A stretch of DNA of 64,000 nucleotides, taken from contig CDRNST010000070.1 of assembly GCA_977016875.1 (NCBI GenBank), positions 744,001-808,000 on the forward strand, read 5' to 3'. The position numbers were made by a program, and so were the translations under genes. Shown here in pieces: positions 10,908 through 33,503 of the stretch. The number at the start of each line of letters is the position of its first letter. The stretch's first letter is position 1. Below the pieces are notes generated by a model. The model was not told the origin of the DNA. It searched no databases and worked only from the letters and a program-made list of their open reading frames with translations. This DNA comes from Pavona decussata. Lineage: Eukaryota.

Positions 10908-12919
10908 AGAACCTGTCCATCAACAATCATTTCATTATACTGCATCACACAATAGATGATTTCCCATTGTATGGGGGTTTGCTATTGTGAAAACACAATA
11001 CCAGGTGAAAGGGAAGCATTGAAAACAAACTCCAGAGGTTTTGATATAAACAGGTTTTTACCATTTTTAGTATGTCAATTGGAATGCTGGGGGTGGGGGA
11101 CTCCCATATAAAAATGGCCGGAGTGATCATTGGAAAACAACCCCTAAAAGGTACCGGAATTCTTTTTTTTGTGTGGGCGTGGTCTGAACAATTTTTTTAC
11201 CCCTTCGAGGTACCAAATCAGTTGACTGACATTTACCTCCTCTCATATGTTTCGGCTCAATACCCTACAAGGTACCACCATACCTCTGACGAAAGTCATC
11301 TTGGATATTAGCAACCTAAGGGGTACCAAACTGCAAATTTTAACCCCTAAAATGTATGACTATTACCCCTGTCACTTTTTTATGGGAGTTCCCCTCCCCC
11401 CAGGGTTGGAATGCTACATGGTCCCACAGCCTACCAGTTTTTAGTTCAGATATTTCACTCTAAAGTTATTTCAGGTAGCCACTGTACCCCTATTATTTGT
11501 GTCTTATATAGTCAGTGCTTTATGTAAACTATGGGGTTAATAAAGTTGGTTATTGTTGTTGTTCATATTTGCAATCAACCGTTACTTTGAACATTGATAA
11601 ATTGAAACATGGCCAAACAGAAGTTTAACTTTGGTTAATAAACTGTTATTAACTGGTTTGGGTGACTCTCAATAGCAAGTAGCAAGCAAGTATAGCAAGT
11701 AAGACTTAATACTAGTGTTTTTCAAATAAGCCTGTTACAAAAAGATTGGTCAAAAGGACTAGAGGAATTTCATTTGATACATTTTTGGCTGCAGTCATAC
11801 TTGACACTGTAGTAGGGAAATCAACAAAAATTCAGTGCAAAGTTACGTGAATTTAATTTATTTTGTATCATTTAATAATAATCTAGCTGACAGAAATGTC
11901 ACACTTGAATTAAGTAAATAAAAAATGGCAAAAATATATATATATAAAAATAAATAGTTTGCTACAAGAAGTTAAGATCTAGACAAATAAATAACACACT
12001 AATCCATAACTATTAGTTGCTTTAAGGTACCTTCATTACAATTCATGTAAGACAAATTAAACAATATAAAATGCCAATAACATTGTTATCTTTTGTTTAA
12101 TTTTGAGAACTAAACAATGGATGTTATTTGTTACACGTAAGAAGTTCTGTGAAATACCCCAAAAGGTTTTTTTTTAATGTTCATCCACATTTTCCCATAC
12201 TATTTTAATATGTGCAGCCTTTATGTACTAACACAACAAAAACATCCATTAAGATAAACTTACACCATGGCCCAATTTATTACTGTTTGTTTAATAACAA
12301 ATAACCATTTAAAGGTTATTCTTTGACTCAAATCTAAATTTTTTTTTGGCTGCTTTTACTTTAGGGTACAGTTTGAAAGTAGCCAAACCACAAGGATGAT
12401 ACAAAGAATTTAAATAAAAATTCCAATTATTACACAAACTATAAATTAAATTGATGCTTAACCCTTTTTAATTTAACCACCAATATCAACATGTATATTT
12501 TCATTACGGTGATCAGTATATTTCTTTTGGTATTGTTGGGTGGGTTTCTTAAAAAAAATAACAATAATAATAACAAGAATTGGTAATCAACTCCTAAAAT
12601 CTTGTGTGCTAAATATTCAGTCAAGTAGTGATATTGTTATTGGTCACCATTGAGGCTTAACAAGTGGAAAACCCTGCTGGAGAATTAGAGAATTCTAAAA
12701 CTAAAGAAAAGCACCAACATAATAATTTATTCAGAACTAAAACAACATGATAAAGGAACTTTTGGCTCACAGCTACATCATTCTTTCATAGGGGAATCTA
12801 ATGGGGCCATCGTATGGTACCACTCACATTTTTCTTTAAATATCGAAATGTGTATTACTTTATTCTTGGGCCAAAAGGGTTGCTGTCTCAAATTGGACTG
12901 GCAGGCTAAATTCTATTTT

Positions 12920-14535
12920 CTACTTGCTTTTCTTTTCTAATATCTTTCTTAAGAAATATTCATGCCACCTTGTATCCTCTGTTAATTCTGGATGAAAAGC
13001 AGTTGCCATCAAATTATCCTGTGCCACCCCAACAACGACAGGTTCTTCCCTTTGGGGCCAGTCAATGGTTGCAAGAACTTCAACTTTAGGACTGTCAACT
13101 GATACCACTGCAGGTGCTCGGATAAAAACTCCATGGTAACTGGCATCGGAGTCACCGTCACTGCATCCATTTATGACACTGCCGCTATCAGAGAGAAGTT
13201 TATTATGAAGATTGACTTTCGTCTCAAAGCTGTTCACCTGGCGTCCAAAAAAATTTCTGGAGGTTGTGACATCAATGCCACCAATCTGATGAGAAAGGAA
13301 AAGAATACAAACTTAAACTTAACTAATGCAAAAAAGGTTTGGCAAATAATGGGAAGAAACATTAAAAAGCTAAGAATGTTCTTTGACTTTGAATGAGTTT
13401 AAAAGGGACCACAAATCCTCCATAATCAGTGGAGGGAACTGGGAGAAGGGGGGAGAAGAGCTGAACTTCCTGGTTAGTTGCAACTTGCCATCCCTCCCTT
13501 TCTAGCTTGCACAATAAAATTTTTTAATATATTTACTGGTAATGTTGGAAAAAATTTCTGTTTTCATGAGCCTGTGTATCTGGCAGTTTTGTTGGCGTTT
13601 GGTGGCCTGCAGCAGAGCCCATTCTTATCGCAGCTTTGCCGCTCACTTTTTATGGCTCTCCCACAGGCCACTCAACCCCAAGTAAATCGCCAGCTACACA
13701 GGCTACTGCTTCATCTGCTTCCTAATTCATTAGGATTCCTGCTTACTGTTTCCGATACCCTCTTCTCTTACATGGCCATTAACCAGTGGCCTAGAATCAA
13801 CATCCATCTTCTCAGAGACAAGAAAGATGCATACTGAGAGTTCATTCTGATGAGAGCTTCCATATAGCTATACAGCGGAAATAGGCCATAAGAGATGTTT
13901 GCTATAAAAATGTGCAGTTCCAGGAAATAAAATGAAACAACAACAAAAAAGCAATACCCCTCCCATGGAAGATTTTTTAGTGGGGCGGCAGGGGGGCGGG
14001 GTGGGAGGAAGGGGGGGGGGGGGGGTTGGCAGTGCTCACCTGCCATTGCCATGTCCAAAACATGATAGATACCCCTACAGAGTACAATGTGGGATCAATT
14101 GTACTGCTCTCAACCAATGAGACTTTTTGTTTAGTCTACAATGTATGATTCTGTGAGGAACTCTATCAGCCAACTTCATACCTTTGACTGTCCACCTTCT
14201 TTTTGAGCTTCTATGTCGTTAGACAGCAAAATCAAGCCAGCACATGTCCCCCAGATAACTTTAGGTTTCTCTTTAGAAGCGACCCATTCTTTCAACACGT
14301 CCTCAAAGTTGCTGGATTGAAGGAACAGACTCATAGTCGTACTCTCTCCTCCGGGCAGAATAAGCCCGTCTAAATCGGAGAGTTGTTCAGGCTCCTTGAC
14401 ATCGCTAACCTCAAGATCAACATCTTTGTTGAATGAGGAGTTGTTCAAGGCTTTGAGAAGGGCTGCTCTGTGCTCAAAGAAGGCGCCTTGAATTGCCAAA
14501 ACACCGATCCTCAATTTCTTACGAGTATCCACCAT
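12920..14535 (-). CDS. PDX2: PLP synthase glutaminase subunit (PdxT/SNO), 2 exons (14535-14182, 13285-12920), ~239 aa
   Basis: Motifs GVLAIQGAF, LPGGEST, WGTCAG (catalytic Cys), RNFFGRQVNSF, FIRAP and FHPEL (His/Glu of the triad). Phase-0 intron AAG|gtatga...atcag|ATT. Confidence 0.95.
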
Positions 14536-14964
14536 GTTGGGGAGTTAATAATGTTAATTAATGTTCGTCGAAGGCCATGCAAGCGTGGACAGGATTGCGT
14601 AATGCAAAATTCATTTTGCTGGGAGGGGAGGGTTAGCTTTAACAAAGCACCTAATCTATCAGCAGAACTATCCTTGCACAAAGTGATACAACTTTGGCTA
14701 AAATAGTATTTTTTAAAACGTAGAATAAAAGTGGCTTTTATTTATGTCCCTCGATGACATCGTTTGTTTTTTCTCTAGGCTTAGCATTTTTTCATCCCCT
14801 CCCCTCCCTAGGTTGATAGTCACAAACGAGCCCGCGTTATTTGAAGCTCTCATTGCACATGTGGCGATATAAGGTAAACCAGTAAAACCACGGTCTGGCA
14901 AAACTGGTGAGATACGTAGCTTCTGCGATCTATATTTTAGAAGAGTAATTTTCTTGAAAAAAAC
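14536..14964. promoter_or_regulatory. Putative bidirectional promoter shared by PDX2 and PDX1
   Basis: Only 429 bp lie between the divergent ATGs (14535 minus, 14965 plus), with no recognisable repeat insertion in this interval although the flanking introns are repeat-rich. Confidence 0.6.
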
Positions 14965-15837
14965 ATGTCTAATACTGTCGCAGTCCCGACTGTAAACGGC
15001 GTGGCCAACGGTGAGTTTTTCAGTTACCACATTAGTGCAGTAGACTTGTTTGTAGAGTTCTTAAAAACTTCACAAGTTTGTAGTTTTCCAAGGCTCCCTA
15101 CATATGATCGAGAAAGTTGTAGTTCAAATTGTGACTTTCGCGTTGAACAGCAGGGCCAATTTATCGACAAATCAAACCGGCGGCTAACGCAGAACAATAA
15201 TGAAAATTACATGTCGCACTTTCGTCTAGCTTGGATCTTTAAACTAATTAAAGACGTGTTTGCTTGTGTGTTGCTTTCTACGAAATCTTTATAGTGAAGC
15301 TAAAACGCGTTGTCATTTATAATAAGGCTCCCTTGTACGCTCTCCTCTCAGTTGTTGCTGTTTTTTTTTTTTGCTCGGTTATATATGAAATATTGACCTC
15401 CAGCTAAATTTAGTTGGTACTCTTGCATAACAATCGCACAAAGAGCTAGACCGCGGTGAAATTTCGTCTGTAAGCTTAAGTGCTTTAATTCTGTTGACTT
15501 ATTTCCCGTTTAGGCGTAATATAATCCACCTTTTTATTGTTATTTGTTCATGAAATTTAACAAGAAAAATATCTAAAACTAAAGGAGGAGAAGAAAGTTC
15601 CAAGATTTTGTAATAATTTGTTATGCAATTCTCTAAGACATGTCACTGTCTACATGTATATAATTACCATGTAATTATGTAACTATGTAATTAATTATGC
15701 AAGCATTGAATTTATAAAGCACCGTGCATAATTCATGACATGTTAGATATAGAACAACTTCAATTTAAAGTTATGCCCAATTTACATGGAAAAAAGTTGT
15801 CCCAGTTAGAAGGGTCACTCGCCTACCCGAGCTACCG

Positions 15838-15868
<31 letters not shown>

Positions 15869-18800
15869 GGAAGGGTGACCCGCCTAGCCGGGTCACCCTT
15901 TTTCGATGGAAGGGGTCACCCTCCTAGCGGAGCCAAGTTTTCTCCATGTAAACACTTTGGCTCGCCCTGCCGGGTAAACTCCATCAAGGCAAGATTATCA
16001 GAGCATTTGCGAGCACTGTTGGCTCGGGCAAAGGGGTCAACTTTTTTCTGACAGTTAATCGCTCGCTGCAGTTGACTCGGCTAGGAAGGTGACCCTCTTT
16101 CCCAGAACAACTCTTCTCCATATAAAAGGGGCCTTAGTTTCCAATGTGGGTCTTTTTCTCATGTTGAATCCATTTAGTTTGAGAGAGCAGGCACTTTTCC
16201 TGGATTTTGTTTTACTCACCAAGAAAAGGTTGTCTACAAAACCAAGGCGACAAATTATTTCTGCTGACAGACCAATTCAAATTATTGATGGAATAGGATG
16301 AGTTAGTGCACTTATGAGGGTGTGATCAGCACTAACATAGACATCCAGTAAACAATGGAAAATTTAAGCCTGTGAGGATACTCCTTAGAATTTTTTGTGA
16401 GGGTGTGCAGCTCGGTTCTCCAAACCCTGATCCTATTTCCAACCAAAGTATATAATTTCCAGTAGCCTTTCTCATATGTGACTTCCAGAATTCATACCCA
16501 TCCTCAGGTACTGTTGCTAGAATGCATACCAGCTTTCAGACTTTTGAATTCAAACTATAGTTAAAATTTATACCTGTTTTCAGATTAAAATGACTCAAAA
16601 CCCATACCCTTTTGCATTTCACATACCAATATAGATTTAATAGGTGAGTCCTCCCGCACGAGCTTACGCCAAACAAAATGTTTGTACAGTTTAATTTAAT
16701 TTAAAGAAGAGCGAATCTGACAAATATGACAAAAACCATAGCTATGACTGAAACAGACTGTCAGCCTTCAGTAAAAGTTGCTTTTAAATGATTGTATTGC
16801 TTCCACTTTTGTTGTTTTAGGCTTAGAACTAGAGGTCAGCAATCTTTCTTTGAACAGAAGAGCAGCAGAGAAAAGTACCAAGGATGTCGTACCATTGCAC
16901 AAGACAGGTAAGCATTTTTTGCCCTGAATTTATGGTGAGATGCACCATTTCACTCAGAGCTAGAATTAGCAAAATTATCGGACACATGAGAAATGGGAAG
17001 GGTGGTGGACTAGTGGTCTCATGGTTTAGTGCATAATGGACAAGGTAAATTTTCTATGAGCAAATTGACATTGGGACTGGCTATTCACAGAACAATTCCA
17101 AAGTGCCACGCAGCTCACCGGTATTTTGCCATTAATTGTTTTATTCACAGAGCACAATGATATGCTTTTTTTTCCTTTTTGAGTGTGCCAAAACTGTTAT
17201 TTTTAACCACTAACAGGAACTTTCAAGGTCAAAGCTGGATTGGCACAGATGGCTAAGGGTGGAATTATTATGGATGTCACTACTGCAGAGCAAGCGAAAA
17301 TTGCTGAGAATGCTGGGGTATGTTTTACACGTACTAAACCTTTCCAGTCTCTGTTGAACCCTGAAGGTATAACACTTCCAAGGATTTGGTTGGCACTCTT
17401 TATTTATTGGATTTAAACTAAGAATGTTCACAGATACAGCCATGAATTGCCCATTCAAAAAACTTCATCTATGAGGAATCTGGGTACAAATTATGCAAAG
17501 GGATATCCGTGAAAGTTTTTAAAACAGACAAACAGAGATAAGCTGCGATATGAACACAGTTTTGAGTGCAGGAGCAGACATTCTTTTTGGAGCTATGTTT
17601 CTGGGAACATGGCAACTCCAATGCTTTGGCCCTTCTGGTCCCATGATTTTCCTTTCTCACAATTAAATAATTAATGATGCCAGAAATCATAGCAGTGTAA
17701 GTTTGTGCCCAGACTCCACACAAGGCAATACAAAAGTGCTAAACTTGGAGATTCTGAAGGTGGAACAATATTGTCAAAAATCAAGGCATAGAGCAGGTGT
17801 TTGAGACCTGCATTGTTCAAGTAGACTGCAAATTATGTGCTGTAAGGCACAGAGTTGAAATATATCACCCTCGTTTGGGGGATGAGTATACACACTAACA
17901 CAGTGAACATCCTTATCATAAGTACTTTGAAAATTAATGGTAACTGTATCCCAACAGGCCTGTGCTGTGATGTCTTTGGAGAGAGTTCCAGCTGATATCC
18001 GCAAACAGGGGGGTGTGGCAAGAATGACAGATCCCAAGGTATAGTGGGTTCCTGTAGTGTCTTTTTTGTAACTCATGAATAGATTTCTGATGCCTGCAAT
18101 TGCTTTTGATTGAAACTTATAATTATGGTCAGTGATTTTCAGACTTAAAAATGTTGGGATTTGAGTTGCAAGTGTTTGTTGTCCTTAAACCCCGTAGAGC
18201 CAGTCCAGAAGAGGCTTGGAGAGATCCTATTCTTCCTAATACCTGTAGCTACATCTATCCCCAAAGGCATAAACATCATCTCGCCCACCACCTCACCCCC
18301 CCCCCCCCCCCTCTTCCAGGTCTCAGGTTAGTTGGCAAGGCTGTCTCAGTCTTAACCCAGCTGTAGGTAATGAGTGAGCCATAAAATCAATCAATCAACT
18401 TTGTTTAAGGAGGGTGACACTTAACAGTCTGGGGTTACAACTGACAAACGTGTGGCCCTCAGATTCCAGATCAAATTTGGTTTTTGAGGAGAGGGGAAAA
18501 CCAGAGAATCCAGAGAAAAACCTCTTGAAGAAAGGATGAGAACCATCAACAAACTCAACCCACATACCGGTATAATGCTGAGTCGGTGAATCGAACCCAG
18601 GCCACATTGGTGCATGGCAAGTGCTCTCACCACTGTGCCATTCCTGTACCCCATGCAAGTGCATCTTCTAATAATACTGTATAGTAACAACACTTTACTT
18701 TTGTTTTGTAGAGGACAAAAGAAATCATGACTGCTGTCACCATACCTGTGATGGCCAAGGCAAGGATTGGACACTTTGCTGAGGCACAGATCCTAGAGGC

Positions 18801-21800
18801 AATTGGTGTTGACATGATTGACGAGTCAGAAGGTTAGCCTCATGTCACTTGTAGTGACTGTCTTTATTGTGCAACTCCAGAAAATAACCATACAGTCATA
18901 AGTTTTTTGCTTTACACCCCCTCCCCCAGGAAATTCCAGTTAAGCTTCATAATTTGCTTCTAAAAGCTTTTAAGACCCCCCTTCATGTAGGAATTTTCAA
19001 TGACCTTCCATGGGGTGGGTATGGATTTTGTCTGGAACTTCAAATTGACATTTGAGATACATTTATTTTCCAGTCAACATCAACTTAACAGGGTTGTTTT
19101 CTGTCTTTTTCTTCTGTCTTAATGAATCTTGAATTTTCCCTGGAAAAAAAAAATGTATTTTTTTTCCTTTCCCTTATAAATTGTTCATACCCTGCTGTGT
19201 GCATGTTCTTTGGGCTTGTGACAGGTCCTTCCCTGAGAATGTCTGCTCAACAGAGTAACAGCTTCTTCTCTGAATTTGCTATTTATTGTAACCAATTGAA
19301 AAAGCCAATCAGCACTACATTGGAATTTAATCCAACATATAATGGGCAATTCCAGAAAATATCCATACCCAACCACGGACGGCTTCCATGTTTTAACCCC
19401 CCCTTGCCTTCGGAAATTCCAAAATGCGTTACCCCCCCATGCCCTCAGAATTCCATAATCGTGAACCCCCCCTCCCCTTCAGAATTTCCGGTTTTTCTGG
19501 GAAGTACATTTTCGATTTTAGCAACGCCTATATGAACAAACGAACATGAATTTATGCCTCCTCAGGGCTGCGATCTAGCTGCGCTAGGCAACAAGCTTTA
19601 CTCTTCAACAAGAAAAACCTACCGCTAGTGGCCAGGCCGTGAAATGGTCTTTTCAAGTCCGAATTTGGCTATAATAATAAACACCATTTACGGCAGTTTT
19701 ACTCCTCTTTGTTTTATTGTGCCATTCAACTCCTTTAGGAAAAGTAGGAAACTAGAACAATGCATTGGATGAAAACAAAAATTATTTCTTTTCACCCCTT
19801 GTTTTATACCCGCACAAAATCCATGCTTCAGTCGGCTTCAGTTTCTGAACCAAAAATTCAATTAAATAAAATTGTATCTGTGATTCCAGGCGCTATCAAG
19901 AGAAAACTTGTGGTTTCAATTACCACATTACGAATACCTAGTATTAACTATTTCAAACGCTTTTAGCGAGGAAGAAGAAAATTACCGATTGTCAACTACA
20001 TTGAAAACAACTTTATGCAAATTTATCAGTGATATGTGATGCGCGTCTTGAATGTTCGATTCCACGTGCCCGAGTCCCTCACGAGTAAACATACATCGTT
20101 GCTGTTTTGTAATTATCTACTTTATTTACAAAATGTTACTGAAAAAAGTAGCAGTCATTAACCCTCATACAAGAGCAGCCTTCCAATCGATCGACTCTTA
20201 CGCCGGAGCACGTGGACAAGATTGCGGCTTTTTCGCGGAATGTAACACGATCGCTTCTGAAATATCTTCGCTGCGCAAGCAGTACGCTGTGCAAGATTAT
20301 ACTTGATTGTACTTGAATCTTTCAAATGAAAACTTCGGAAAAAGCATTTCCTTTTTTAAAAACGTACAACGTCTACGGTAAAATTCGGCAAGGAACCGGG
20401 GAAACTTCAACGTGGCCGCTCGCTTGCCTTTGAGCAGACTTTGTTTACATCTTTGGCGTAGCGTTACAAATTTGCATAAATATTATCGAGATCATCGAAT
20501 CTCAAAAGGCGATGTCACGTTTTCTTCATTTCAAATCGTAACCGTGTCTTCCTCTCAAAGATGACTACCTGTCCACTTAACCCAGTAATAAACAGTGAAG
20601 GAAGCGATATTAAAGGATTGCACCTTTTTCGGCCGCTGTTTCACAAGCTGAGAATGGAAACACGCGCGATCGCTACCAGTACGCTGCACATAATTATGCT
20701 TGATTGTACTTTAATCTTTCGAATCAAACCTTTGAAAACAGCATTTCCTTGATTAAAAAACGAGCAAAGGCCCCCCCATGCCCTCAGAATTCCATAATCG
20801 TGAACCCCCCCTCCCCTTCGGAATTCCATAATCGTGAACCCCCCCTCCCCTTCGGAAATCCTAAAAGCCGTCCGTGGTATGGTATGGATATTTTCTGGAA
20901 TCGCCCAATGCAAAATATATAGGTAGTGTGCTCTAAACAAAATTTGGAACTAAACGAGATGTCTTGATAAGAGTCCAGGCAAATTGTTTTCAGGTAAGGA
21001 TTTTCATACCTTGGACAATTACCAGATTTTGCTTGGAATACACTAAACGAAATACTGTAAGTTAACAATGTTCAATAATTGGATTAAATACTGATAATGC
21101 TTTGTAAATTTTTCCAACAGTGTTGACTGCTGCTGATGAGTCTCACCACATTGATAAACACAAGTTTACAGTTCCTTTCGTCTGTGGAGCAAGAGATCTC
21201 GGAGAAGCACTCAGAAGGATTGCAGAGGGAGCAGCTATGATCAGGACTAAGGGACAGGCTGGGACAGGTGAGAGTGGCTTAAAATGTCCCCACCCACTCC
21301 TCCCTCCCAGCATCCCATCCCACCACCACACCCACTGTTACCACAGTTGAACCCTTTTGTATCAGATCAGCCTAATTTAAAAATAAAATTAAGTTTTTCA
21401 TGGTTAAGTTACTTGTTACTATTGCAAGAAATTAAATAAATAAATTAATAAATAAATAAGTAAATAGAGGATGTAATTTTGTTTTTATCATACAGACAAT
21501 CTCTTGCTCGCTATTTTTCACCGACTGTTTGCACAAACAACCATGATAAAAAGGGAAATGACGTTATCAATATCCTCATGAGTGAGGATATGGAAAATAC
21601 GTCACTTGTGTGTCCCAGGTGTTGTTTTGAATGAATTTTGTGAGTGATGATCCAGTAAAACACTCATATCTATATAATAAGTAAAAACATTTAGTAGGGC
21701 TGTCATAAGTAGCCAGTAACCGACTTTTATGGGTGGCAACTACTGTGAAGATGACCAGCTAATCAGAGTTTGAAAGAGACCAAAAGACAGCAGTCAAATG

Positions 21801-23424
21801 AATTATATGGCCAGCTACTTTTCCTGAAGAGCTGGCTTCTTCAAAAGCTTAATGACAACCCTACTTTTACTACCTTGAATTTGCGGGTCACTGCTTAAAC
21901 ATGTAACGTTGCTGTAAATTGTGTACAGTTGCATATGTGGGTCAATACATGATATAATATTTAATTGTGAAAATTGCAAACATTTAATGGCAATTGTTAT
22001 CGAGGTACACCTTATTTGCTAAAACTATCTTTTAACATTCTCAAAGTGTGATATTTATAACTATTTTTAACTTGAAGGTGATGTTGCTGAAGCTGTTCGT
22101 CATGCCAGAACCATACGCAGTCAAATTCGCCATGCACAATCATTGGACTCAGCTGAACTGTTCTCTTATGCAAAAGAGCTGAGGGTTCCGTTTGAGCTTC
22201 TTCAAAAGACTGCTGAGATGGGTCGCTTACCTGTAGTAAACTTTGCTGCTGGAGGTCTTGGTAAGTTTTACTTTGGACTTACATGTGCTCATAAGCAAAA
22301 ATCCACCTGAGCAAATATGATTATGGGGTCATAAAAACCTAATGCAAGCCCTTCCAAAAATAATCTTCCCAAAACTTACGTAGTGCTCCCAATCTTGGAT
22401 AGATGATCACAGATGCAAGCATCCTTCCAATAATTAGCCCTTTGCCTGAATAATTATAAGCCTGCAGACTGTAACTCTTTAAGCTCCAATAGCGAACAGC
22501 GTCTAATTTCTCCCTACAATACCACTGCATGATCAAACATGTAAGTCATGGAGAATAAAGGAAATGATCACCAAAGATAAAATGTCTTGTGTTCAAATAA
22601 AAAAGAAATTCTCCCAACTAGTATCACAAGAAATGTTTGTTTTTCGATATTTGGACTGACAGGGTAAAGGTTAGCTGTCTTAAAGGGAGGGGTTCTGCGC
22701 ATGTCCATGAATCAAAATACTTTTTCGCCTTTGCTCGCTATGACCCAAGCCTGTGTAAGTTAATTCGTTTATGAACCATTCAGAAGGGAATAGGTAAGTC
22801 GGGTGGTAATTTTTTCATGTGATTGCGTTATTTCGCATGCAAATAACTCTAAACACATTAACCGTGGAATAAATCCTACGGGTCAACACTAAATTCAATA
22901 TTGACAATATGAGTACAATCCACTAGCATTTTCTGTGAATTTTGGTCATCAGACATTTTGCTTGGACTAATTATAGAATGTGATCACTGAAGTATATGTG
23001 AGTGGGATTTTTAAGGCCATTTAAGAGAAAAAATCATTTAGATTCATGCACGTGGACTGAAACGTAAACTGCTCCCGTTTAAACAGTCTTTTGTCAAGCT
23101 AAACCAACTTGAAAGTGAACAGCCCCTCTAACAATAAGTTACCAAAAACACAAACCGTCCTTGAAAATGAGCTCTAATATGTCAATTTGTTTTTGCCGCA
23201 CATGTACAGCCACTCCAGCAGACGTGGCGCTTCTGATGCAGCTTGGTGTGGATGGCGTCTTTGTTGGATCGGGAATTTTCAAGAGTGACAATCCCACGAA
23301 GAGGGCCTGGGCAATGGCTCAAGCTGTCACTCATTACAACAACCCCAAGAAGCTCGCCGAGCTTAGCGAGGACTTGGGAGAGGCGATGTTTGGAACACCA
23401 GTCAGTGATGTCAAACACAAGTGA
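14965..23424 (+). CDS. PDX1: PLP synthase synthase subunit (PdxS/SNZ), 8 exons (14965-15010, 16821-16907, 17217-17317, 17958-18038, 18712-18832, 21121-21267, 22078-22260, 23210-23424), ~326 aa
   Basis: All exons join in frame at GT-AG sites (981 nt total). Motifs [92 protein letters not shown]. The first two exons are inferred from splice-phase fit only. Confidence 0.93.
15771..16136. mobile_element. MITE, PIF/Harbinger-like, in PDX1 intron 1
   Basis: Imperfect TIRs (GCCCAATTTACATGG / CCATATAAAAGGGGC), TTA flanks and internal AAGGGTCACCC repeats. Confidence 0.55.
18385..18652 (-). mobile_element. tRNA-derived SINE in PDX1 intron 4
   Basis: On the minus strand: A box TGGCACAGTGG, B box GGTTCGATTC, central GGTTTTTCTCTGGATTCTCTGGTTTTCCCCTC block and a (GATT)n tail. 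Confidence 0.8.
19344..20906. mobile_element. 1.56-kb non-autonomous TIR element (PIF/Harbinger-like) in PDX1 intron 5
   Basis: TIRs GGGCAATTCCAGAAAATATCCATACC / GGTATGGATATTTTCTGGAATCGCCC, AAT on both flanks, subterminal repeats GAATTCCATAATCGTGAACCCCCC. Short relatives at ~18869-19040 and 25283-25469. Confidence 0.85.
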
Positions 23425-26164: not shown

Positions 26165-28863
26165 CTAAATTGTAGCAGCAGCTGCAGCTAATCCGTGCTC
26201 AAAATAGTTAGCAAAGTACACCTTCTTTGTGAGCATGGAGAGTTGACATGAAATCTGCTTGCACCCACCAGGCACTGTGTACTCCCTGCACATAGAATTG
26301 TTGACTCTGGTCAGCATTGTCATCAAATCTTCTTTGTGAGAGTATTTCTGGAAAACCTGCACCAAACAGGAAATAAACCAGGAGCCCAGCATCTTTCCAT
26401 GAGCTGCCGCAACCCTCTTATTGTCTGTGAATCGTCGATGGGATACATACCCCCTTGTGGTAGAGTATGCAATTAAAAAATCTGCATCTGATGGCAATTT
26501 CACAGGCATCTCTTCTATATTATCACCAGCATCTGGGTAAACATGGCATGGTCCTCTCTTGACTACATAACCATCATCGTCGACATCACCCCTACAGGCC
26601 TGAAGGAAGAATAGTTTGGGTTTTGTTGCTAGTTGGGGGCATGTGCCACCTTGAAATTTGGCTGTTATGTCGTCGACTGGTACTGTTTGGCTGTCTGATG
26701 CCAAGATACCCTCTTCATTTCCATGGCTCATTATAATGCAGATAAAACTGTCATGATCAACTATAAAAGCAAACCAAATTGACAAGCACTTAAATTTTAA
26801 AGTGATACCACATTGAACTATGTTAAGGCAGATATAAATTATGCTTATATAATGTTCTCCCTTATTTCTTGAAATACCAAATTCTTGCAGCTCAATATTG
26901 AGCCATCTGTTTTGCTTTCTCCATAATCTTTGATTAAATTGAAGCACTGATTAATACATTAAAGACAGGAGAAGCTATCCCTTTTATAGGGTGGATCCTA
27001 ATAGAGTAGAGTTTTCAGACAAACAAGTGAAATTTGTCAAGGACCACATGAGCTGACGATGTCTTCCTTACTTTGAAGGAGTTCACAGTGTACCCTTTCA
27101 AATGAATGAGAAAAGCACAAAGGAAGCTTTGGTGTGGGAGGTAGGGAGAGATGGCCTAATCCTCCCCCCCCCCCCCACCCCATCCTTCACCTTTCCTACA
27201 TTATCAAATGCAAAATAATACCGATAGTGAAATGTTACTGAGGTTTTTTTCCCAGGGAGGTACTCGGGTATAAATTTGATGGGGGGGAGGGGGGGTCCGA
27301 TGGAGCCTAATATTTTGCACCCAAAAAAATACATGGACCTTATATTGTGCACCCAAAAAAATACAAGATAATATAATATTCAATCATGCTTTCCGATCAT
27401 GCGGGAACTTTGGCTTGAATTGTGTGAACTATTACCCTGGCGGAAATTCGCACCCAAAAAAATACGCGCAGATTTGTTAGACCCCCAAAAATACATCTTC
27501 AACCCAAAAAAAATAAAGGAGTTGAAAATTTTAGACCCAAAAAAATATGTTGGACCCCCCCTCATCCCCTCCCGTCACGTTTATACCCGAGTATCCCCCC
27601 TGGGGTTTTTTTATGTTCTTTTACATATGATGCATGATTTGTCATTTCTATTTAGTTAATTATGCTTTGTCTGAAAGTCCTGTGATTTGTTTTTGTGTTT
27701 TTAAAGTTTGGGGGAGTAGAGGGCCCTTTTTAATAGGCTATGTTCCGGATAGCTTTTGTGTCTAATAATTTTCCCCACAAAAAACTCGCCCTCTCTAATA
27801 AATTCTGCCAAAATGAGGGTTGTTACCATTTTTGACCGTAGCGGAAGTATTCGGGTGTATTTGTAACGGGAGGTGCGAACCTGGGTTTGAGATCACAGAG
27901 ATGGGGGACTTTTGGAAAAAATTAACTGACGGGCTTTTTGAGGGGGATTAGGGTTTTTTATGTGGTAGTTCGTAAAAAAGAGACGTTAGAACATATCCAA
28001 CCTACCAAGTGATCCCTTCAGTCGAGTTTCCTCCAACACTTCCAACATTTTCTTTTTCGGCAAATCGAAACGCTCCACAACAGTTTTAAATCCAGCTTCT
28101 TTGACAAACGTTCTCACGTTGTCCCGATCGTGACTTGCACCATTTCTCGGCCGTGGGTCCCTTGTGAAGTAAAAGTTGACATTGTTTATGACTAAAACGT
28201 ACGGATTCTTTATTCCATCGTATGCTTCAACTACGGAGAGATGCCTTTGTCTGGCTAGAGCACGAAGAATGTTTCGATTTACGTCCATAGTAGGTTGAGC
28301 CGGAGCTGATGAGGGAGTATTCTCTGAAGTATTTGAGGTAGCGTCTGCTTGGTCCAAACAACTGAAATATCCTAATGTAAAGGAATCTGAAAAAAAAAAC
28401 AATCAAATATAATGAAATAATTGTCATTTGATTCGTAATATTTCTCTTTCACTTCCTAAGGAAACAAACATAAAAAATTATCATCCGTTCTTCGAACTAT
28501 TCTTGGATGTTGCAAAACGAATGTGTACTAAAATATTACGTAAATTGCAACAGTTGTACGCACGTGGTAATAAGAAACAGAAATATTCAACAAATCCTCC
28601 TCGCGCTTGTGCATTTCCTGATTTGCAGACTTACCAATTTTTCCCCCCGTTTGGGCATTCCTGTCTATAAAGTTAAAACTGCGAGCTCCTTGTGACTTTT
28701 CACTTCGCTGCAACTTACTGACGCATTGACAATCCATTCCTCCGAGCGCCGAGCAATCGCAAAGGCGAAATCGTTCTAAAAGTTCTTGGGCTCTGTGTAT
28801 TTTGTCACAGGCATATCGTAGACAAACCGTTCTGGTTATAGACCTGCAGCGCTCTGTATCCAT
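26165..28863 (-). CDS. Caspase (peptidase C14A), copy 1, 3 exons (28863-28635, 28386-28006, 26760-26165), ~401 aa
   Basis: Motifs VLVINNVNF, RNGA..D, IMSHG (catalytic His), KPKLFFLQACRG (catalytic Cys), ADFLIAYST, GSWFI and SMLTKK. The exons join with phase-1 GT-AG introns (1206 nt). Exon 1 is inferred from its ATG plus the donor ATTG|gtaagt. Confidence 0.88.
27251..27604. mobile_element. MITE in caspase copy 1 intron, 8-bp TSD GTTTTTTT
   Basis: TIRs CCCAGGG..TACTCGGGTATAAA, subterminal ACCCAAAAAAATA repeats. Empty site at ~35313-35320. Confidence 0.85.
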
Positions 28864-28946
28864 CGTTATATAAATTTCTCAGTAAAATTTGTTCACCGAG
28901 TTCTGAGTTATAAACCCCGGGGTTTAAACCAGTATAATGTTACATA

Positions 28947-29007
28947 CCGGAAGTGGTTGCTAGGTGTTTTCGCATTGGATGCAACCGGAAGCTTTAGTGC
29001 CGGAAGT
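28947..29007. promoter_or_regulatory. Cluster of three ETS-type CCGGAAG(T) motifs upstream of caspase copy 1
   Basis: CCGGAAGT at 28947, CCGGAAG at 28985 and CCGGAAGT at 29000, about 85-145 bp upstream of the minus-strand ATG at 28863. Confidence 0.5.
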
Positions 29008-30806
29008 CAAAATACCTTCAACGTCACTCCTTCTTTTCAGTCCTGTTATTTCTTTTCTTTTCTTTTTTTTTTTTTTTTGAAAAGAAAATCACACGCGTTA
29101 AGAACTTAAGCCAACCTTTTTTCCTAACATCTTGACAGTTAAATTTCTTTTTTGGGCCTAAATGATGTCAATACGTTACGGGTAAGTCCCAGTATACATG
29201 CTATCTGATTGAATTGAACCGTGGAAGAGCGTTTCAGACAACTGAATGGCGGACACTATAATACATCCGTTTTATCTTCATAGCTGAACGGCACGTGATC
29301 GACGGCTTCGAAACCAGTTATTTTCAGTTTCTGAGACATGATGTTGTTTCCATCTCACAAACTGGCACGTTTTCGCAAATAAAGATTATCACGAGTGATT
29401 ATTTCTAGTGATAAATATACTAACTTGCGAGTGACAACTTGACACAAAAGTTTGTTAGTTGACGTTCGATTCAGGGGTTTAACGTTTGTATTCAGAAGTT
29501 TAACTTGCTTCCTTTCACCGCTTTCGTAAAGTAATAAATCTCTAAAATTTGGGTGGAACGTTGGTAATTGTAATCTTTAAGTACTTAGTACCGGTTTAAG
29601 TGACTCATGTGGAAGTGGACTTTCGAAAGAGGTTCAGAAGTAGTACAACTTTTACTTTGGGGTTTGATGTAACGATCTTTCAACTTTTAACTGTTGTAGT
29701 CTATGGCTACCTCCCTATCAAGGATCGTCCTCCACGCAAGTGCTGCATTTTGAATCCTTTCATAGTACAAGAATCCAGCTTGTGGATTCATATTCATTTC
29801 CTCTTAAGTTAGTTTGGGGCAACTGATTGTACATCGGGCACCAAATCTGTCAATCCTCAACCGTACACTTGTAAAATAATTTAGCTCTGACTTATGAGGA
29901 CGTCGGTGCAGTTACCTTGTTACTTGTTTTTATTTTTATCCGAGTTCAGAAATATCATGATGAAATCGTAGAAAACTTAGAAGCCCCGATCAAAATATAG
30001 TAGCCAGAAGACATGAAGACATGATAATGTATACAGACAGGAACGGAACAGGATTGACCTTAATATTTGTTCAAAATTCTCCACCCATGACCTCAGGTGT
30101 GATGGAATGTTTGGAGCTTTGTATCCAAACAAGATTATGTTGACATTTCGTTGGGTGGTTCTTTCCCAGAATTACATCCATTTTACGTAAGCGGCAAGCT
30201 TCTTATGTGATCGAACGTATTATCTTCTTAGTACGTGCACGTTCTACGGGGATAAATAAATTACTTACTTACTTTAAATAGTATAACATAAAGGAGACCT
30301 CACACTCTTTATGGCGTCATAAATAATTCACCAAAACTGTTCAAAGAGCCTGTGTACTTCAGACTTTAGTTATAAACGAATGACGCGCAAGTTGTTACAC
30401 TGCAGACAAATATTGCAGAAATCTTACCGGGAAGTAGAATTTGGAGCAGAACTGTTCAATTGTAATACGGTTCAATGGCTTAATGGTAATCACGGAGACT
30501 GACTCGCGAACTGTTATGGAAACCTAAAAGCTGGGAACCAGACTTTTACCTTTTTATGGAAGCTTGAGTGCGTCAGCGATCAAAGACAAAGTCAGAGGTA
30601 TAACTTCATAGAGTTTCATAAATCTGTTCCGGTGTATCGCGGCTGGCCGTTATATATTTTACTCCTGCGCACGGAATCTTTATTTTGCTTTCCGTTCACA
30701 GCAGTTTGTGTAGCCACCCTTTAAAATTTCATTTTCTATTTTCTGATACCTCTCACCCAATCTACGCTGAAATAAAAGATTCCATTACGTTATTCTTGCA
30801 AAAAAC

Positions 30807-30837
<31 letters not shown>

Positions 30838-32037
30838 CAGTCAAAATTCGTGCGCGTGCTCGCGCGCGCCTCTCGCGCGTGGGTTTGATAATACTCCCCC
30901 GGACCCCAAATGAAGGACCAAGCACTCGATAAGCAATCTTTTGTGTGAGTTCCATCATTGTATAACAGCAGGAGCATAGTTAAGCACAACGCAAAAATGA
31001 AGCAGTCATCCTGTATAAATGTCTTCTTTTATTATTATATTACCATTAACTGTGCGAAAGTGTTAAGAAGGTGCTAAGCATGAGGTCAAATTATTAAATT
31101 ACCCTTGGTTTGTCACGGGATCCTAGCTCAGTTCTCTGCTGGACTGCTGATAACAAAGACCTACCAGACTGCATGTACTGACAGTAAAGATTCTTCCTAT
31201 GGGAAGGGTAAAGAAGTGTATTAAATTGCAGTGATAAAACCCCAGAGAAAACAAAGAGATCAATGAAGCGAAAGAGTTTTTAAGTGGCACTTCCGGTAGG
31301 AGGCTCTTGTGACTGCCGTCGATATTAGCGTGAAATCGAACGAAATTCAATATGTAAGAGTTTGACCCGAGCTAGGTAAACGAGGGTTTAATATTACACT
31401 GTGCTTTGGCAAACGTCACGTTTTTTCAGAACTGTTAATTAAACACCAATAATCATATTTGTATATGTGTTAAACTGCGGTCAGATAGCGGAGCAACAAA
31501 CAAACATATACTATAGCAAAGAACAAAGCCAGCACCCCGGGGAAAACATTTAAAGAACGAAAGTTTGCGCTGCGTGAGTTATCTGTCTGAAAAAGAAATA
31601 AACCGTTTTGTTCAACATCAAATGTTGTTCGCAACAAGAGTGCAACATATAATTCGCTTGTCCGCTTCAGCTAAACGCCAATTCTCAGACGTTCCCTGGT
31701 CGAGACGAGGCATCGGCAACAAAGACAACGTGGACAGTTCATTGTATGCTAAGCAATCGTCCAATAAAGGATTTTAAATAAACCATGTGTCATTAACAAT
31801 TAATTTTTAGTCGAAGCTTCTAAAATTTTGACTTTTAAGACCCCCCTCCCCCCTAGGAATTTCTGATGACCTTCCATGGGGTGGGTGTGAAATTTTCGGG
31901 AACTGCACAATTGCCCTTTGCGATAAATATGGACCTGAATCTCTCTTACTAGCAGCTCTAATTACCTTGAGAAAACAAAAAGCTTAGGATTCTGGAAGCT
32001 GTGGTCAAATGATACCATAATGGCATTGTCCTATTGG

Positions 32038-33105
32038 CCAGGCGTAGTCAATCGATAGAAATCGATATCGGAAATCAATCGATACCATCGATATCAATCC
32101 GTGATTGATATCGATTGATAACGGTAATCGATAACAATCGAACTCCCAGAAAAAATTTATTATCGACTTTTATCGATTGAGATAATGGATAATAATCGAT
32201 AACAATTACTAATTCCAGGGAGTCTCTGGAGAAGTATTCGTTTCAAAGATGGCGTTACTATTTAGTAAAGAATACGAGACCCGCGTTCAAATGGTAAAAC
32301 ATTTTATTATTTCAGCAGGTAGTTCTTGGTTTGGGGTTTTAAAATATTTTAACTTGGCCATTCATCCCAGCGCTGTCGATTGCATCTTGCATCTCCTTTA
32401 TGGCGCTCTCCAAGCACTTCCAAACAATAATATATCACAATTCGCGAGTCGAGCCTTTATTTTATGACGACGAAAAACACAGAAAATTACTTCTTCTTTT
32501 ACATCTGTTCTTCCTAATCAATATTTAGGGAGCAAAAGTGATTACTTCTGTGCTACTGGATTATTTTTTATTTCTTGCTTGCTCTGCCATTTCGCTTCTT
32601 TCTTATTGTAATTAACTGAAATTATAAAAAGACTGATTTTGTTGTTTATTTTGCTTCATATTTATGGCGTTGCTATAGCGAGACAAGAGGGTTGCACACC
32701 GCTACTTTGGTCGCAACTTCCTCTTCTTCTTTGAACCGCGCTGAAGCTTAACATCGATAAAAATACCAAATTATTTCTGTTATTGTTCTTGTTCTTTTAG
32801 TATCAGCTTGTTGATATTTGCATTGCATATATATCCACGATTGAATGACTCAATAAAACCATAAAAAAAATCGTGTCAATCTTTAACTTGTAGAGATTGA
32901 CAAAAATAGTTTCCAATAAAAATCGATAACAATCGATAAATCAATCCTTATCGATTTCCATCGGAGATCGATATCAATCGAACTCACAACTTTTTTTCTT
33001 TATCGATTCCTATCGAGTGGTATCGGAAATCGATATCAATCGAAGATTGATATCGATTGCTATTGACTGTTATCGATTATCGGTTTATCGATTGACTACA
33101 CCTGG
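32038..33105. mobile_element. 1068-bp non-autonomous TIR element with ATCGAT-rich subterminal arrays, 6-bp TSD TATTGG, only in unit 2
   Basis: TIRs CCAGGCGTAGTCAATCGATA / TATCGATTGACTACACCTGG. TSD at 32032-32037 and 33106-33111. Empty site TATTAG at 25831. Confidence 0.9.
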
Positions 33106-33503
33106 TATTGGTGTACCTTGGGTTAAATATTTTGATAATTTATTTGAGTAGCCAACAAAATGAGATTCTGGTGCCTTCCCCTTTAACCCCTAATATCAAA
33201 GAACAAATTCTCCTATCTTGTCCTCATACTTTTCTTATAAAAAGTACTGGGGAATAGTCATTTTTTTTTAAATATCCAGGAAATTCACCTTAGTTGATCA
33301 TTTCCTTAATTCTCGTGACCTCAGGGGTTGAATAAGCATTGATTTTAAAAAGGAGAAATTTGATCTTGATTACTCCTAGGGCTTAAAGGGTTAAGGAGGT
33401 GCTTTTAGATTTCTTATGATTATCTGCATCACTTCTGTATGAACGTCCTTCCTGAGTTTGAAGGATGACTACTTGAAGAAGTACAGTTGTTTTCTGAGTA
33501 TTT

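What the first reader, a model, noticed from the sequence alone, without database searches (positions are those of the whole stretch)
12920..23424. Complete de novo vitamin B6 synthase as a head-to-head PDX2/PDX1 pair in an animal genome
Seen: both subunits are intact, spliced and divergently oriented, with 429 bp between ATGs. Catalytic residues are present (PDX2 Cys/His/Glu; PDX1 Asp of MDV, Lys of MAKAR and RTKG). Established: PDX1+PDX2 make PLP from glutamine, ribose-5-phosphate and glyceraldehyde-3-phosphate; vertebrates and most bilaterians lack them; yeast SNZ/SNO pairs are divergent and bacterial pdxST are operonic. Inference: the host makes its own B6 (also a singlet-oxygen quencher, relevant to a light-exposed symbiotic animal) from a co-regulated two-gene unit that is either very ancient or convergent. 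Seven introns filled with host-type repeats argue against bacterial contamination.
Basis: partly seen in the sequence, partly recalled or inferred. Interest (0 to 1): 0.75.

Follow-up and report, generated by a model that had tools for sequence, protein, structure and literature searches.

The report
Coral's own vitamin B6 synthase genes
This stony coral carries one intact, transcribed pair of back-to-back genes for making vitamin B6, but the same pair in the same layout occurs in many other invertebrates, so it is a real though largely ordinary feature.

Summary
PDX2 (minus strand, 2 exons, 239 aa) and PDX1 (plus strand) face away from each other with exactly 429 bp between their ATGs. Every catalytic residue checked is present. 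Each gene is single-copy in the 602-Mb genome. PDX1 therefore has 8 exons (326 aa) and the pair has eight introns, not seven.

The scaffold is animal. The introns hold dispersed repeats of the same genome, caspase genes lie next door, and PDX2 groups with named stony corals.

The finding is not rare. PDX1 or PDX2 is already annotated in sponges, cnidarians, molluscs, annelids and tunicates. The head-to-head layout was present in 11 independent outside loci, including annotated Ciona and Owenia; it was absent only in Amphimedon. Several intron positions appear shared among coral, annelid and sponge-like loci. The pair is therefore old and inherited, not convergent and not a gene transfer.

The new lead is in the promoter. 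An identical 12-mer occurs once upstream of each gene in mirror orientation, and nowhere else in the 64 kb. A bZIP site sits where other corals and sponge-like loci have the exact ATF4/C-EBP core, recalling Gcn4 control of yeast SNZ1/SNO1.

The scan had not noted this pair before.

The parts
12920..13285 (-). PDX2 exon 2 (coding, includes the stop codon); carries the FHPE His/Glu of the catalytic triad
   Evidence: Pfam SNO. The acceptor AG and the RNA joint 13285>14182 are seen in 3 runs. It aligns to PdxT/Pdx2 structures.
12495..12919 (-). PDX2 3' untranslated region (minimum extent)
   Evidence: RNA contigs run on from the stop codon down to 12514 and 12495. One contig continues past 12400.
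13286..14181 (-). PDX2 intron (896 bp), phase 0 after Lys118
   Evidence: RNA joint that skips 896 bp with CT..AC ends, i.e. GT..AG on the minus strand. Twelve exon-1 homologues all end at the same residue.
14182..14535 (-). PDX2 exon 1 (coding, ATG at 14535); carries PGGESTT and the catalytic Cys of GTCAG
   Evidence: Pfam SNO, 7.7e-27. Aligns to B. subtilis PdxT structures 2NV0/2NV2.
14536..14964 (.). 429-bp region between the two ATGs: the presumed shared bidirectional promoter plus both 5' UTRs
   Evidence: Sequence. RNA contigs reach 14572 on the PDX2 side and about 14849 on the PDX1 side. No contig bridges the middle.
14594..14603 (+). bZIP site ATTGCGTAAT (C/EBP-type), 22-31 bp beyond the furthest PDX2 RNA contig end
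   Evidence: Alignment A1. In the same place and orientation, L010, L012, L014 and L016 carry the exact core TTGCATCA, and L015 carries TTGCGCAA. Post hoc binomial P is about 8e-8.
14621..14632 (-). C-rich box CCCTCCCCTCCC on the PDX2 strand, 49 bp beyond the PDX2 RNA contig end
   Evidence: One of only two matches in 64 kb at up to 1 mismatch; 0.09 expected by chance. Conserved in L008 and L010.
14797..14808 (+). Identical C-rich box CCCTCCCCTCCC on the PDX1 strand, the mirror partner of 14621-14632
14828..14846 (+). Conserved block GAGCCCGCGTTATTTGAAG directly upstream of the PDX1 RNA-covered region
   Evidence: Alignment A1; conserved in L008 and L010.
14965..15010 (+). PDX1 exon 1 (ATG plus 15 codons plus 1 nt)
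   Evidence: RNA contig covers 14876-15009 and joins to 16820/1. Homologous first exons are present in L008 and L010.
16821..16907 (+).
   Evidence: RNA joints 15010>16821 (1 run) and 16907>17217 (3 runs). The frame is open. Conserved in L008 (87%) and L010 (61%). The coral N-terminus from residue 15 aligns to the Pomacea PDX1 N-terminus.
17217..17317 (+). PDX1 exon 3; carries the catalytic Asp (D24 in B. subtilis numbering)
17958..18038 (+). PDX1 exon 4
   Evidence: RNA joint 17317>17958 in 3 runs. Pfam SOR_SNZ.
18712..18832 (+). PDX1 exon 5; carries the Schiff-base Lys (K81) and D102
   Evidence: Loose RNA ends after 18038 read the start of this exon. Aligns to PDX1/PdxS structures.
21121..21267 (+). 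PDX1 exon 6; carries R147 and K149 (RTKG). The usual Glu after the Gly is Gln here.
22078..22260 (+). PDX1 exon 7
   Evidence: Pfam SOR_SNZ. Splice sites and frame. No reads were laid on this exon.
23210..23424 (+). PDX1 exon 8 (includes the stop codon)
   Evidence: Frame and splice site. Collinear with annotated animal PDX1 to the C-terminus.
15834..16140 (.). Roughly 300-bp dispersed repeat with inverted ends, inside PDX1 intron 1
   Evidence: 281 candidates in the coral's own genome; the 40 that were scored are 86-89% identical and lie on many contigs. It has very high depth in RNA contigs.
19341..19560 (.). Young dispersed repeat inside PDX1 intron 5
   Evidence: 301 candidates; all 40 scored matches (one of them this copy) are 96-100% identical, and they lie on many contigs. 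Related pieces occur at 20754-20907.

Best explanation
This is the coral's own single-copy gene pair for the DXP-independent PLP (vitamin B6) synthase. PDX2 is the glutaminase (SNO/PdxT type). It releases ammonia from glutamine. PDX1 is the synthase (SNZ/PdxS type). [quoted passage not shown] The two genes are transcribed in opposite directions from a gap of about 430 bp that acts as a shared bidirectional promoter. Both the pair and its head-to-head layout were inherited vertically from early animals. Shown here: intact reading frames, catalytic residues, splicing, transcription, single copy, animal context, and conservation of the layout and of apparent intron positions. Inferred: enzyme activity, use of one shared promoter, and co-regulation.
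For: Family and residues. Open spliced models that are collinear end to end with annotated proteins: PDX2 is 81-84% identical to Montipora and Desmophyllum, and PDX1 is 74-79% identical to mollusc, annelid, tunicate and sponge proteins. Transcription and splice joints appear in RNA contigs from three studies, with no contig bridging the gap. There is one copy of each gene in 602 Mb. Animal scaffold: dispersed host repeats in the introns, caspase, CH-domain and isocitrate-lyase neighbours, and a caspase beside PDX1 in a TARA coral scaffold as well. The same head-to-head layout occurs in L008, L009-11, L012-L016, in two further loci listed without DNA, and in annotated Ciona intestinalis and Owenia fusiformis. 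Trees: PDX1 falls in the eukaryote/animal cluster, separated from 28 prokaryotic PdxS by a branch with 100% SH-aLRT support. PDX2 falls in a clade with 98% SH-aLRT support together with named stony corals. Intron positions appear shared with Owenia and the sponge-like loci: PDX1 after residues 78, 105, 145, 194 and 255, and PDX2 after residue 118. Mirror-image 12-mers lie in the gap.
Against: No enzyme assay or complementation was done. Contigs cannot give true transcript starts or expression levels, so a shared promoter and co-regulation remain inferences. PDX1 exons 6-8 rest on homology and splice consensus; exon 5 has only loose-end read support, because reads were laid only up to 18100. 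A nearly invariant Glu in the RTKGEAGTG loop is Gln in this coral and in two related loci (3 of 62 rows), with unknown effect. The PDX1 tree lacks fungi, plants and dinoflagellates. Shared intron positions were read from tblastn segment ends, not from annotated exon tables.
Confidence: 0.88

Rival explanations
1. The pair comes from bacterial or algal contamination, or from a recent horizontal transfer into the coral lineage.
For: PDX1 is so conserved that sponge PDX1 is up to 73% identical to Chloroflexota PdxS. Percent identity alone therefore cannot exclude this. Cyst nematodes are reported to have acquired such genes by transfer (from my own memory; the papers listed were not read).
Against: There are eight GT-AG introns, and they contain repeats dispersed through the same genome. 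The window lies more than 740 kb into its contig and has animal neighbour genes. Both trees place the genes with animals and apart from prokaryotes. Apparent intron positions and the head-to-head layout are shared with annelid, tunicate and sponge-like loci.
Confidence: 0.02
2. The genes are intact but no longer make B6. They would act as a pseudoenzyme or regulator, like plant PDX1.2, or have some other role, and the coral would still depend on food and microbes for B6.
For: The Glu-to-Gln change next to K149 is found only in this coral and two related loci. No activity data exist. Coral microbiome papers attribute B6 supply to bacteria (PMC9296628).
Against: All catalytic residues of both subunits are kept. 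Each gene is single-copy, so no catalytic paralogue exists for a pseudoenzyme to regulate. Protein identity to active homologues is 74-79%. Both genes are transcribed.
Confidence: 0.07
3. The head-to-head layout arose independently in this coral lineage (convergence) and was not inherited.
For: Amphimedon PDX1 has no PDX2 within 10 kb, so the linkage can be broken and could in principle re-form. Whether the yeast and animal layouts share an origin cannot be decided from these data.
Against: The same orientation, with a short gap, occurs in 11 independent outside loci. These span stony corals, other cnidarian-like lineages, sponge-like loci, a tunicate and an annelid.
Confidence: 0.03

Closest known systems
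Saccharomyces cerevisiae SNZ1/SNO1 (and SNZ2/SNO2, SNZ3/SNO3) divergent pairs
   Same: The two enzyme families are the same. The genes are adjacent and divergent, and each pair is expressed from one bidirectional promoter. SNZ1/SNO1 is activated directly and in both directions by the bZIP factor Gcn4 (PMC7187267, PMC7773203). The coral gap also carries a bZIP site, and related corals and sponge-like loci carry the ATF4/C-EBP core.
   Different: The yeast genes have no introns and exist as three paralogous pairs. The coral has a single pair with eight introns. The coral site is a C/EBP-type variant, not a Gcn4 site, and no regulation has been shown in any animal.
Suberites domuncula SNZERR/SNO genes (Seack et al. 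2001, PMID 11470156; cited in PMC7954711 and PMC3078890)
   Same: This was the first animal SNZ/SNO pair, and its gene structure and promoter were studied. As I recall it, that paper describes the genes as linked head to head, but I could not read it here. L014, whose PDX1 groups with Suberites in the tree, shows the same head-to-head layout.
   Different: It is a sponge with compact genes: about 0.45 kb from the PDX2 ATG to the conserved PDX1 exon, against 2.7 kb in this coral. The coral PDX1 has two small extra 5' coding exons.
Bacterial pdxS-pdxT operon (B. subtilis PdxS/PdxT, PDB 2NV1/2NV2)
   Same: The same two-subunit glutamine amidotransferase with identical catalytic residues.
   Different: The bacterial genes are co-directional in one operon and have no introns. 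Prokaryotic PdxS sequences fall on the opposite side of the tree.
Annotated animal PDX1 ('SNZERR-like') and PDX2 ('PdxT-like') genes in public genomes
   Same: These are orthologues. PDX2 is annotated in Montipora, Desmophyllum, Actinia, Nematostella, Xenia, Hydractinia and many molluscs. PDX1 is annotated in sponges, annelids, tunicates and molluscs. Ciona and Owenia have the same head-to-head layout.
   Different: I found no paper that discusses the layout, the promoter or the host's own capacity in corals. The Gln in the RTKG loop is specific to this coral and two related loci.

Membership tests
PDX1 / SNZ / PdxS (PLP synthase subunit, Pfam PF01680) | Match to the SOR_SNZ profile above the curated cut-off, covering the whole domain | tested here: met
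   Exons together cover profile positions 2-207, each above 27 bits.
PDX1 / SNZ / PdxS (PLP synthase subunit, Pfam PF01680) | Catalytic residues D24, K81, D102, R147 and K149 (B. subtilis numbering) | tested here: met
   Mapped through gap-free matches to 2NV2 chain A.
PDX1 / SNZ / PdxS (PLP synthase subunit, Pfam PF01680) | Uninterrupted full-length reading frame that is actually spliced and transcribed | tested here: met
   326-aa open model. The joints between exons 1-4 are seen in RNA contigs, and exon 5 is read in loose ends. Exons 6-8 rest on homology only.
PDX1 / SNZ / PdxS (PLP synthase subunit, Pfam PF01680) | Forms PLP from R5P, G3P and ammonia | not testable with these tools
   Needs an enzyme assay or a complementation test.
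PDX2 / SNO / PdxT (glutaminase subunit, Pfam PF01174) | Match to the SNO profile above cut-off, plus the Cys-His-Glu triad | tested here: met
   94.8 and 53.6 bits. The Cys of GTCAG aligns to B. subtilis PdxT. The His and Glu of FHPE align to T. maritima and Plasmodium Pdx2.
PDX2 / SNO / PdxT (glutaminase subunit, Pfam PF01174) | A PDX1 partner is present in the same genome | tested here: met
   One copy of each gene, adjacent to each other.
Divergent SNZ-SNO gene pair with a shared bidirectional promoter (yeast/sponge type) | Adjacent genes on opposite strands with their 5' ends facing and a gap under 1 kb | tested here: met
   429 bp between the ATGs.
Divergent SNZ-SNO gene pair with a shared bidirectional promoter (yeast/sponge type) | Both transcript starts lie inside the gap | tested here: inconclusive
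   RNA contigs end at 14545-14572 on the PDX2 side and at about 14849 on the PDX1 side, and none bridges the gap. Contigs cannot prove a transcript start.
Divergent SNZ-SNO gene pair with a shared bidirectional promoter (yeast/sponge type) | The two genes are co-regulated | not testable with these tools
   Both genes are present in the same three RNA libraries, but contig depth is not a measure of expression.
Gcn4/ATF4-controlled B6 synthase promoter (as in yeast SNZ1/SNO1) | A Gcn4/ATF4-class binding site lies in the shared promoter and is used | tested here: inconclusive
   The window has ATTGCGTAAT, a C/EBP-type site, not the ATF4 core. The exact core TTGCATCA is present in four related lineages. 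Binding and use were not tested.

The most novel reading that the evidence does not exclude
The animal PDX2/PDX1 gap would be an ancient, structured bidirectional promoter under bZIP control. In this coral an identical 12-mer (CCCTCCCCTCCC) sits once upstream of each gene in mirror orientation. A C/EBP-type site lies next to the PDX2 start. In other corals and in sponge-like loci that position holds the exact ATF4/C-EBP composite core (TTGCATCAT) in the same orientation. If that site is used, vitamin B6 synthesis would be tied to the amino-acid/integrated stress response from yeast (Gcn4 on SNZ1/SNO1) to sponges and corals. That would make it a regulatory link as old as the opisthokonts.
Probability: 0.35. 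Interest if true: 0.55.

Novelty: new member of a known kind. Interest (0 to 1): 0.3.

Why it matters
Textbooks and recent holobiont papers state that animals cannot make vitamin B6. One 2025 sponge paper says so (PMC12665527), although that sponge's own PDX1 is in the public protein database. Such papers credit symbiotic bacteria with supplying the vitamin. This coral, and many other marine invertebrates, carry an intact, transcribed host-encoded synthase. Models of B-vitamin exchange in coral and sponge holobionts should take that into account. The pair is also a compact, widely conserved animal bidirectional promoter, and its candidate bZIP site gives a directly testable hypothesis. As a discovery it is modest, because the genes and their layout are already known from a sponge and from yeast and are annotated in public genomes.

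Tried and rejected
(1) A scan of metagenome contigs with an alignment of cnidarian-type PDX2 exon 1 was meant as a hold-out test of the promoter motif. The generic pattern PGGESTTM flooded it, and it returned only matches of at most 49% identity, apparently bacterial PdxT-type. No new cnidarian or sponge locus was gained.

(2) The 2001 sponge paper is not held. Its head-to-head statement is therefore from my memory only. I relied instead on L014, which groups with Suberites.

(3) Searches for 'SNZERR' and for coral or cnidarian B6-synthase papers found nothing that describes the host genes.

(4) Bacterial contamination or gene transfer was considered and rejected, on introns, host repeats, neighbour genes and the trees.

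(5) A PDX1.2-like pseudoenzyme was considered and rejected, on the conserved catalytic residues and the single copy.

(6) The TATA-like GATATAAGG at 14866-14874 is not conserved in L008, so I did not use it.

(7) The large representative protein search, structure prediction and fold search were not run.

(8) The spliced (joined) proteins were never sent to any search tool. Exons were searched by reference. The join was made only inside local scripts, for the frame check, local alignments and trees.
Full report
OBSERVATION. On the minus strand, PDX2 has two coding exons: 14535..14182 and 13285..12920. Both have consensus splice sites, and the frame is open for 239 aa. On the plus strand, PDX1 starts at 14965 and stops at 23424. 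The gap between the ATGs is 14536-14964, which is 429 bp. Pfam SNO and SOR_SNZ hit the exons far above cut-off. A six-frame search of the whole 602-Mb assembly finds each family only at this locus.

RNA EVIDENCE AND ONE CORRECTION. I laid contigs from four runs on 12400-18100.
- Three runs, from three studies, hold spliced PDX2. Each shows the joint 13285>14182, which skips 896 bp with GT..AG ends on the minus strand.
- The same three runs hold spliced PDX1. The joints 16907>17217 and 17317>17958 appear in all three.
- One run, in a 3,038-nt contig, also shows 15010>16821.
- The exon is in frame. It is conserved in two other coral loci, at 87% and 61%. The coral N-terminus from residue 15 aligns with the N-terminus of Pomacea PDX1.
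- PDX1 therefore has 8 exons and encodes 326 aa. The pair has eight introns.
- Exons 6-8 were not covered by laid reads. They rest on homology and splice consensus.
- PDX2 contigs end at 14545, 14566 and 14572. The PDX1 contig reaches about 14849. No contig bridges the middle. This fits transcript starts inside the gap, but contigs cannot prove a start.

ENZYME IDENTITY. Exon translations were matched by reference against solved structures.
- PDX1: gap-free matches to B. subtilis PdxS (2NV2) place Asp at 24, Lys at 81, Asp at 102, Arg at 147 and Lys at 149.
- PDX2: it keeps PGGESTT, the Cys of GTCAG and the His/Glu of FHPE.
- Full length: the locally joined models are collinear end to end with annotated proteins. 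PDX2 is 81-84% identical to Montipora and Desmophyllum. PDX1 is 74-79% identical to mollusc, annelid, tunicate and sponge proteins.
- One oddity: the nearly invariant Glu in RTKGEAGTG is Gln in this coral and in two related loci, 3 of 62 rows.

ANIMAL ORIGIN.
- The introns carry dispersed repeats of the same genome. A roughly 300-bp element at 15834-16140 has 281 candidate copies; the 40 that were scored are 86-89% identical. A young element at 19341-19560 has 301 candidates; the 40 scored matches, one of them this copy, are 96-100% identical and lie on many contigs.
- The neighbouring genes are caspases, a CH-domain gene and an isocitrate lyase.
- A TARA coral metagenome scaffold has the same PDX2-PDX1-caspase order.
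- Earlier scan notes call this genome a stony coral. In my PDX2 tree the window falls in a clade with 98% SH-aLRT support together with Montipora and Desmophyllum.

COMPARATIVE EVIDENCE.
- A word search with PDX2 exon 1 found exon-sized reading frames on long eukaryotic scaffolds, at 99% down to 43% identity.
- I fetched nine of these places. In every one, SOR_SNZ exons lie directly upstream on the opposite strand. tblastn confirmed this on the seven that came with DNA.
- A search with a long PDX1 frame from L016 showed that PDX1 ('SNZERR-like') is annotated in sponges, annelids, tunicates and molluscs.
- Annotated Ciona intestinalis and Owenia fusiformis have the same head-to-head pair. Amphimedon does not.
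- A third search named PDX2 in stony corals, anemones, an octocoral, a hydrozoan, many molluscs and Monosiga.
- In the PDX1 tree, 28 prokaryotic PdxS sequences sit across a branch with 100% SH-aLRT support from a eukaryote cluster made up mostly of animals. The coral clade (99%) groups with molluscs.
- Segment ends from tblastn suggest shared intron positions in coral, Owenia and the sponge-like loci. In PDX1 these follow residues 78, 105, 145, 194 and 255. In PDX2 the position follows residue 118. Twelve PDX2 exon-1 homologues all end at the same Lys.
- The pair and its layout are therefore old and vertically inherited.

PROMOTER ANATOMY.
- The ATG-to-ATG gap is 429 bp in the window, 442 in L008, 398 in L010, 367 in L012 and 655 in L015.
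- The 12-mer CCCTCCCCTCCC occurs only twice in the 64-kb window, at up to 1 mismatch, against 0.09 expected by chance. Both copies lie in the gap, one on each gene's strand: 14621-14632 (minus) and 14797-14808 (plus). Each is 41-49 bp beyond the RNA-covered end. The mirror pair is kept in L008 and L010.
- At 14594-14603 lies ATTGCGTAAT, which by my own knowledge of the consensus is a C/EBP-type bZIP site.
- At the same place and in the same orientation, L010, L012, L014 and L016 carry the exact core TTGCATCA, extended to TTGCATCAT. L015 carries TTGCGCAA.
- Given the background rate in these loci, four of seven lineages within 150 bp in one orientation gives P of about 8e-8. This test is post hoc. 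It is still about 3e-3 after correcting for all 8-mers.
- In yeast, each SNZ/SNO pair has one bidirectional promoter, and SNZ1/SNO1 is activated directly and in both directions by Gcn4, the ATF4 counterpart (PMC7187267, PMC7773203).
- The parallel is a lead and has not been shown.

MECHANISM. PDX2 hydrolyses glutamine. PDX1 uses the ammonia together with R5P and G3P to make PLP; this is established for the family (PMC7954711). The coral makes both subunits from one short divergent control region. That arrangement would keep their amounts matched, which is an inference.

WHAT IS KNOWN, AND NOVELTY. The DXP-independent pathway is recorded 'in some sponges' (PMC7954711), citing the 2001 Suberites paper on SNZ/SNO gene structure and promoter. 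I could not read that paper. The genes are annotated widely in public genomes. I found no paper that discusses the host genes in corals. One 2025 sponge paper still states that animals cannot make B6. I file this finding as a new member of a known kind, with interest 0.3.

LIMITS. The spliced proteins were joined only inside local scripts. The metagenome scan gave no new animal loci. The N run at 48173-48303 was left untouched.

Noticed in passing
window 21247-21249 (codon after RTKG in PDX1 exon 6): The nearly invariant Glu of the RTKGEAGTG phosphate-binding loop is Gln in this coral, in L008 and in L010. Across the alignment 58 of 62 rows have Glu and only these 3 have Gln. It appears to be a substitution specific to these three related coral loci, with unknown effect.
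   Followed up: partly
window 15834-16140: A roughly 300-bp repeat with inverted ends lies in PDX1 intron 1. It has 281 candidate copies in the genome. It also reaches very high depth (up to about 2,270) in coral metatranscriptome contigs, so the family is abundantly transcribed.
   Followed up: partly
window 19341-19560 and 20754-20907: A very young dispersed repeat: the 40 scored matches are 96-100% identical and lie on many contigs. Related direct and inverted pieces occur twice within PDX1 intron 5, which suggests recent activity.
   Followed up: partly
L013:6629-8135: In a sponge-like locus the 3' half of PDX1 (residues about 194-315) is present twice in tandem. PDX2 there has no intron.
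   Followed up: no
L017 (Amphimedon queenslandica GL345375.1): PDX1 is flanked by PARP/macro-domain genes and has no PDX2 within 10 kb. This was the only locus examined where the head-to-head linkage is broken.
   Followed up: partly
window 12400 and below; RNA contig of run X6: One PDX2 RNA contig continues about 1.5 kb beyond 12400. The PDX1 contig of run X16 is 3,038 nt long for a 981-nt coding sequence. Either the UTRs are long or the contigs run into neighbouring transcripts.
   Followed up: no
window 26165-34124 and L009:1-69: Caspase paralogues lie downstream of PDX1. The same PDX2-PDX1-caspase order occurs in a TARA coral metagenome scaffold, so local gene order is conserved between stony corals.
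   Followed up: partly
L018:9158-9276 and 9920 (Ciona intestinalis): Two perfect CRE palindromes (TGACGTCA) and AP-1/Gcn4-type TGA(C/G)TCA sites lie around the annotated starts of the Ciona PDX2/PDX1 pair. This is another bZIP-rich gap, but without the TTGCATCA core.
   Followed up: no
Literature: PMC12665527 compared: A 2025 paper on the sponge Halisarca dujardinii states that animals cannot synthesise vitamin B6. The public nr database nevertheless holds a 'SNZERR-like' PDX1 from that same species.
   Followed up: partly
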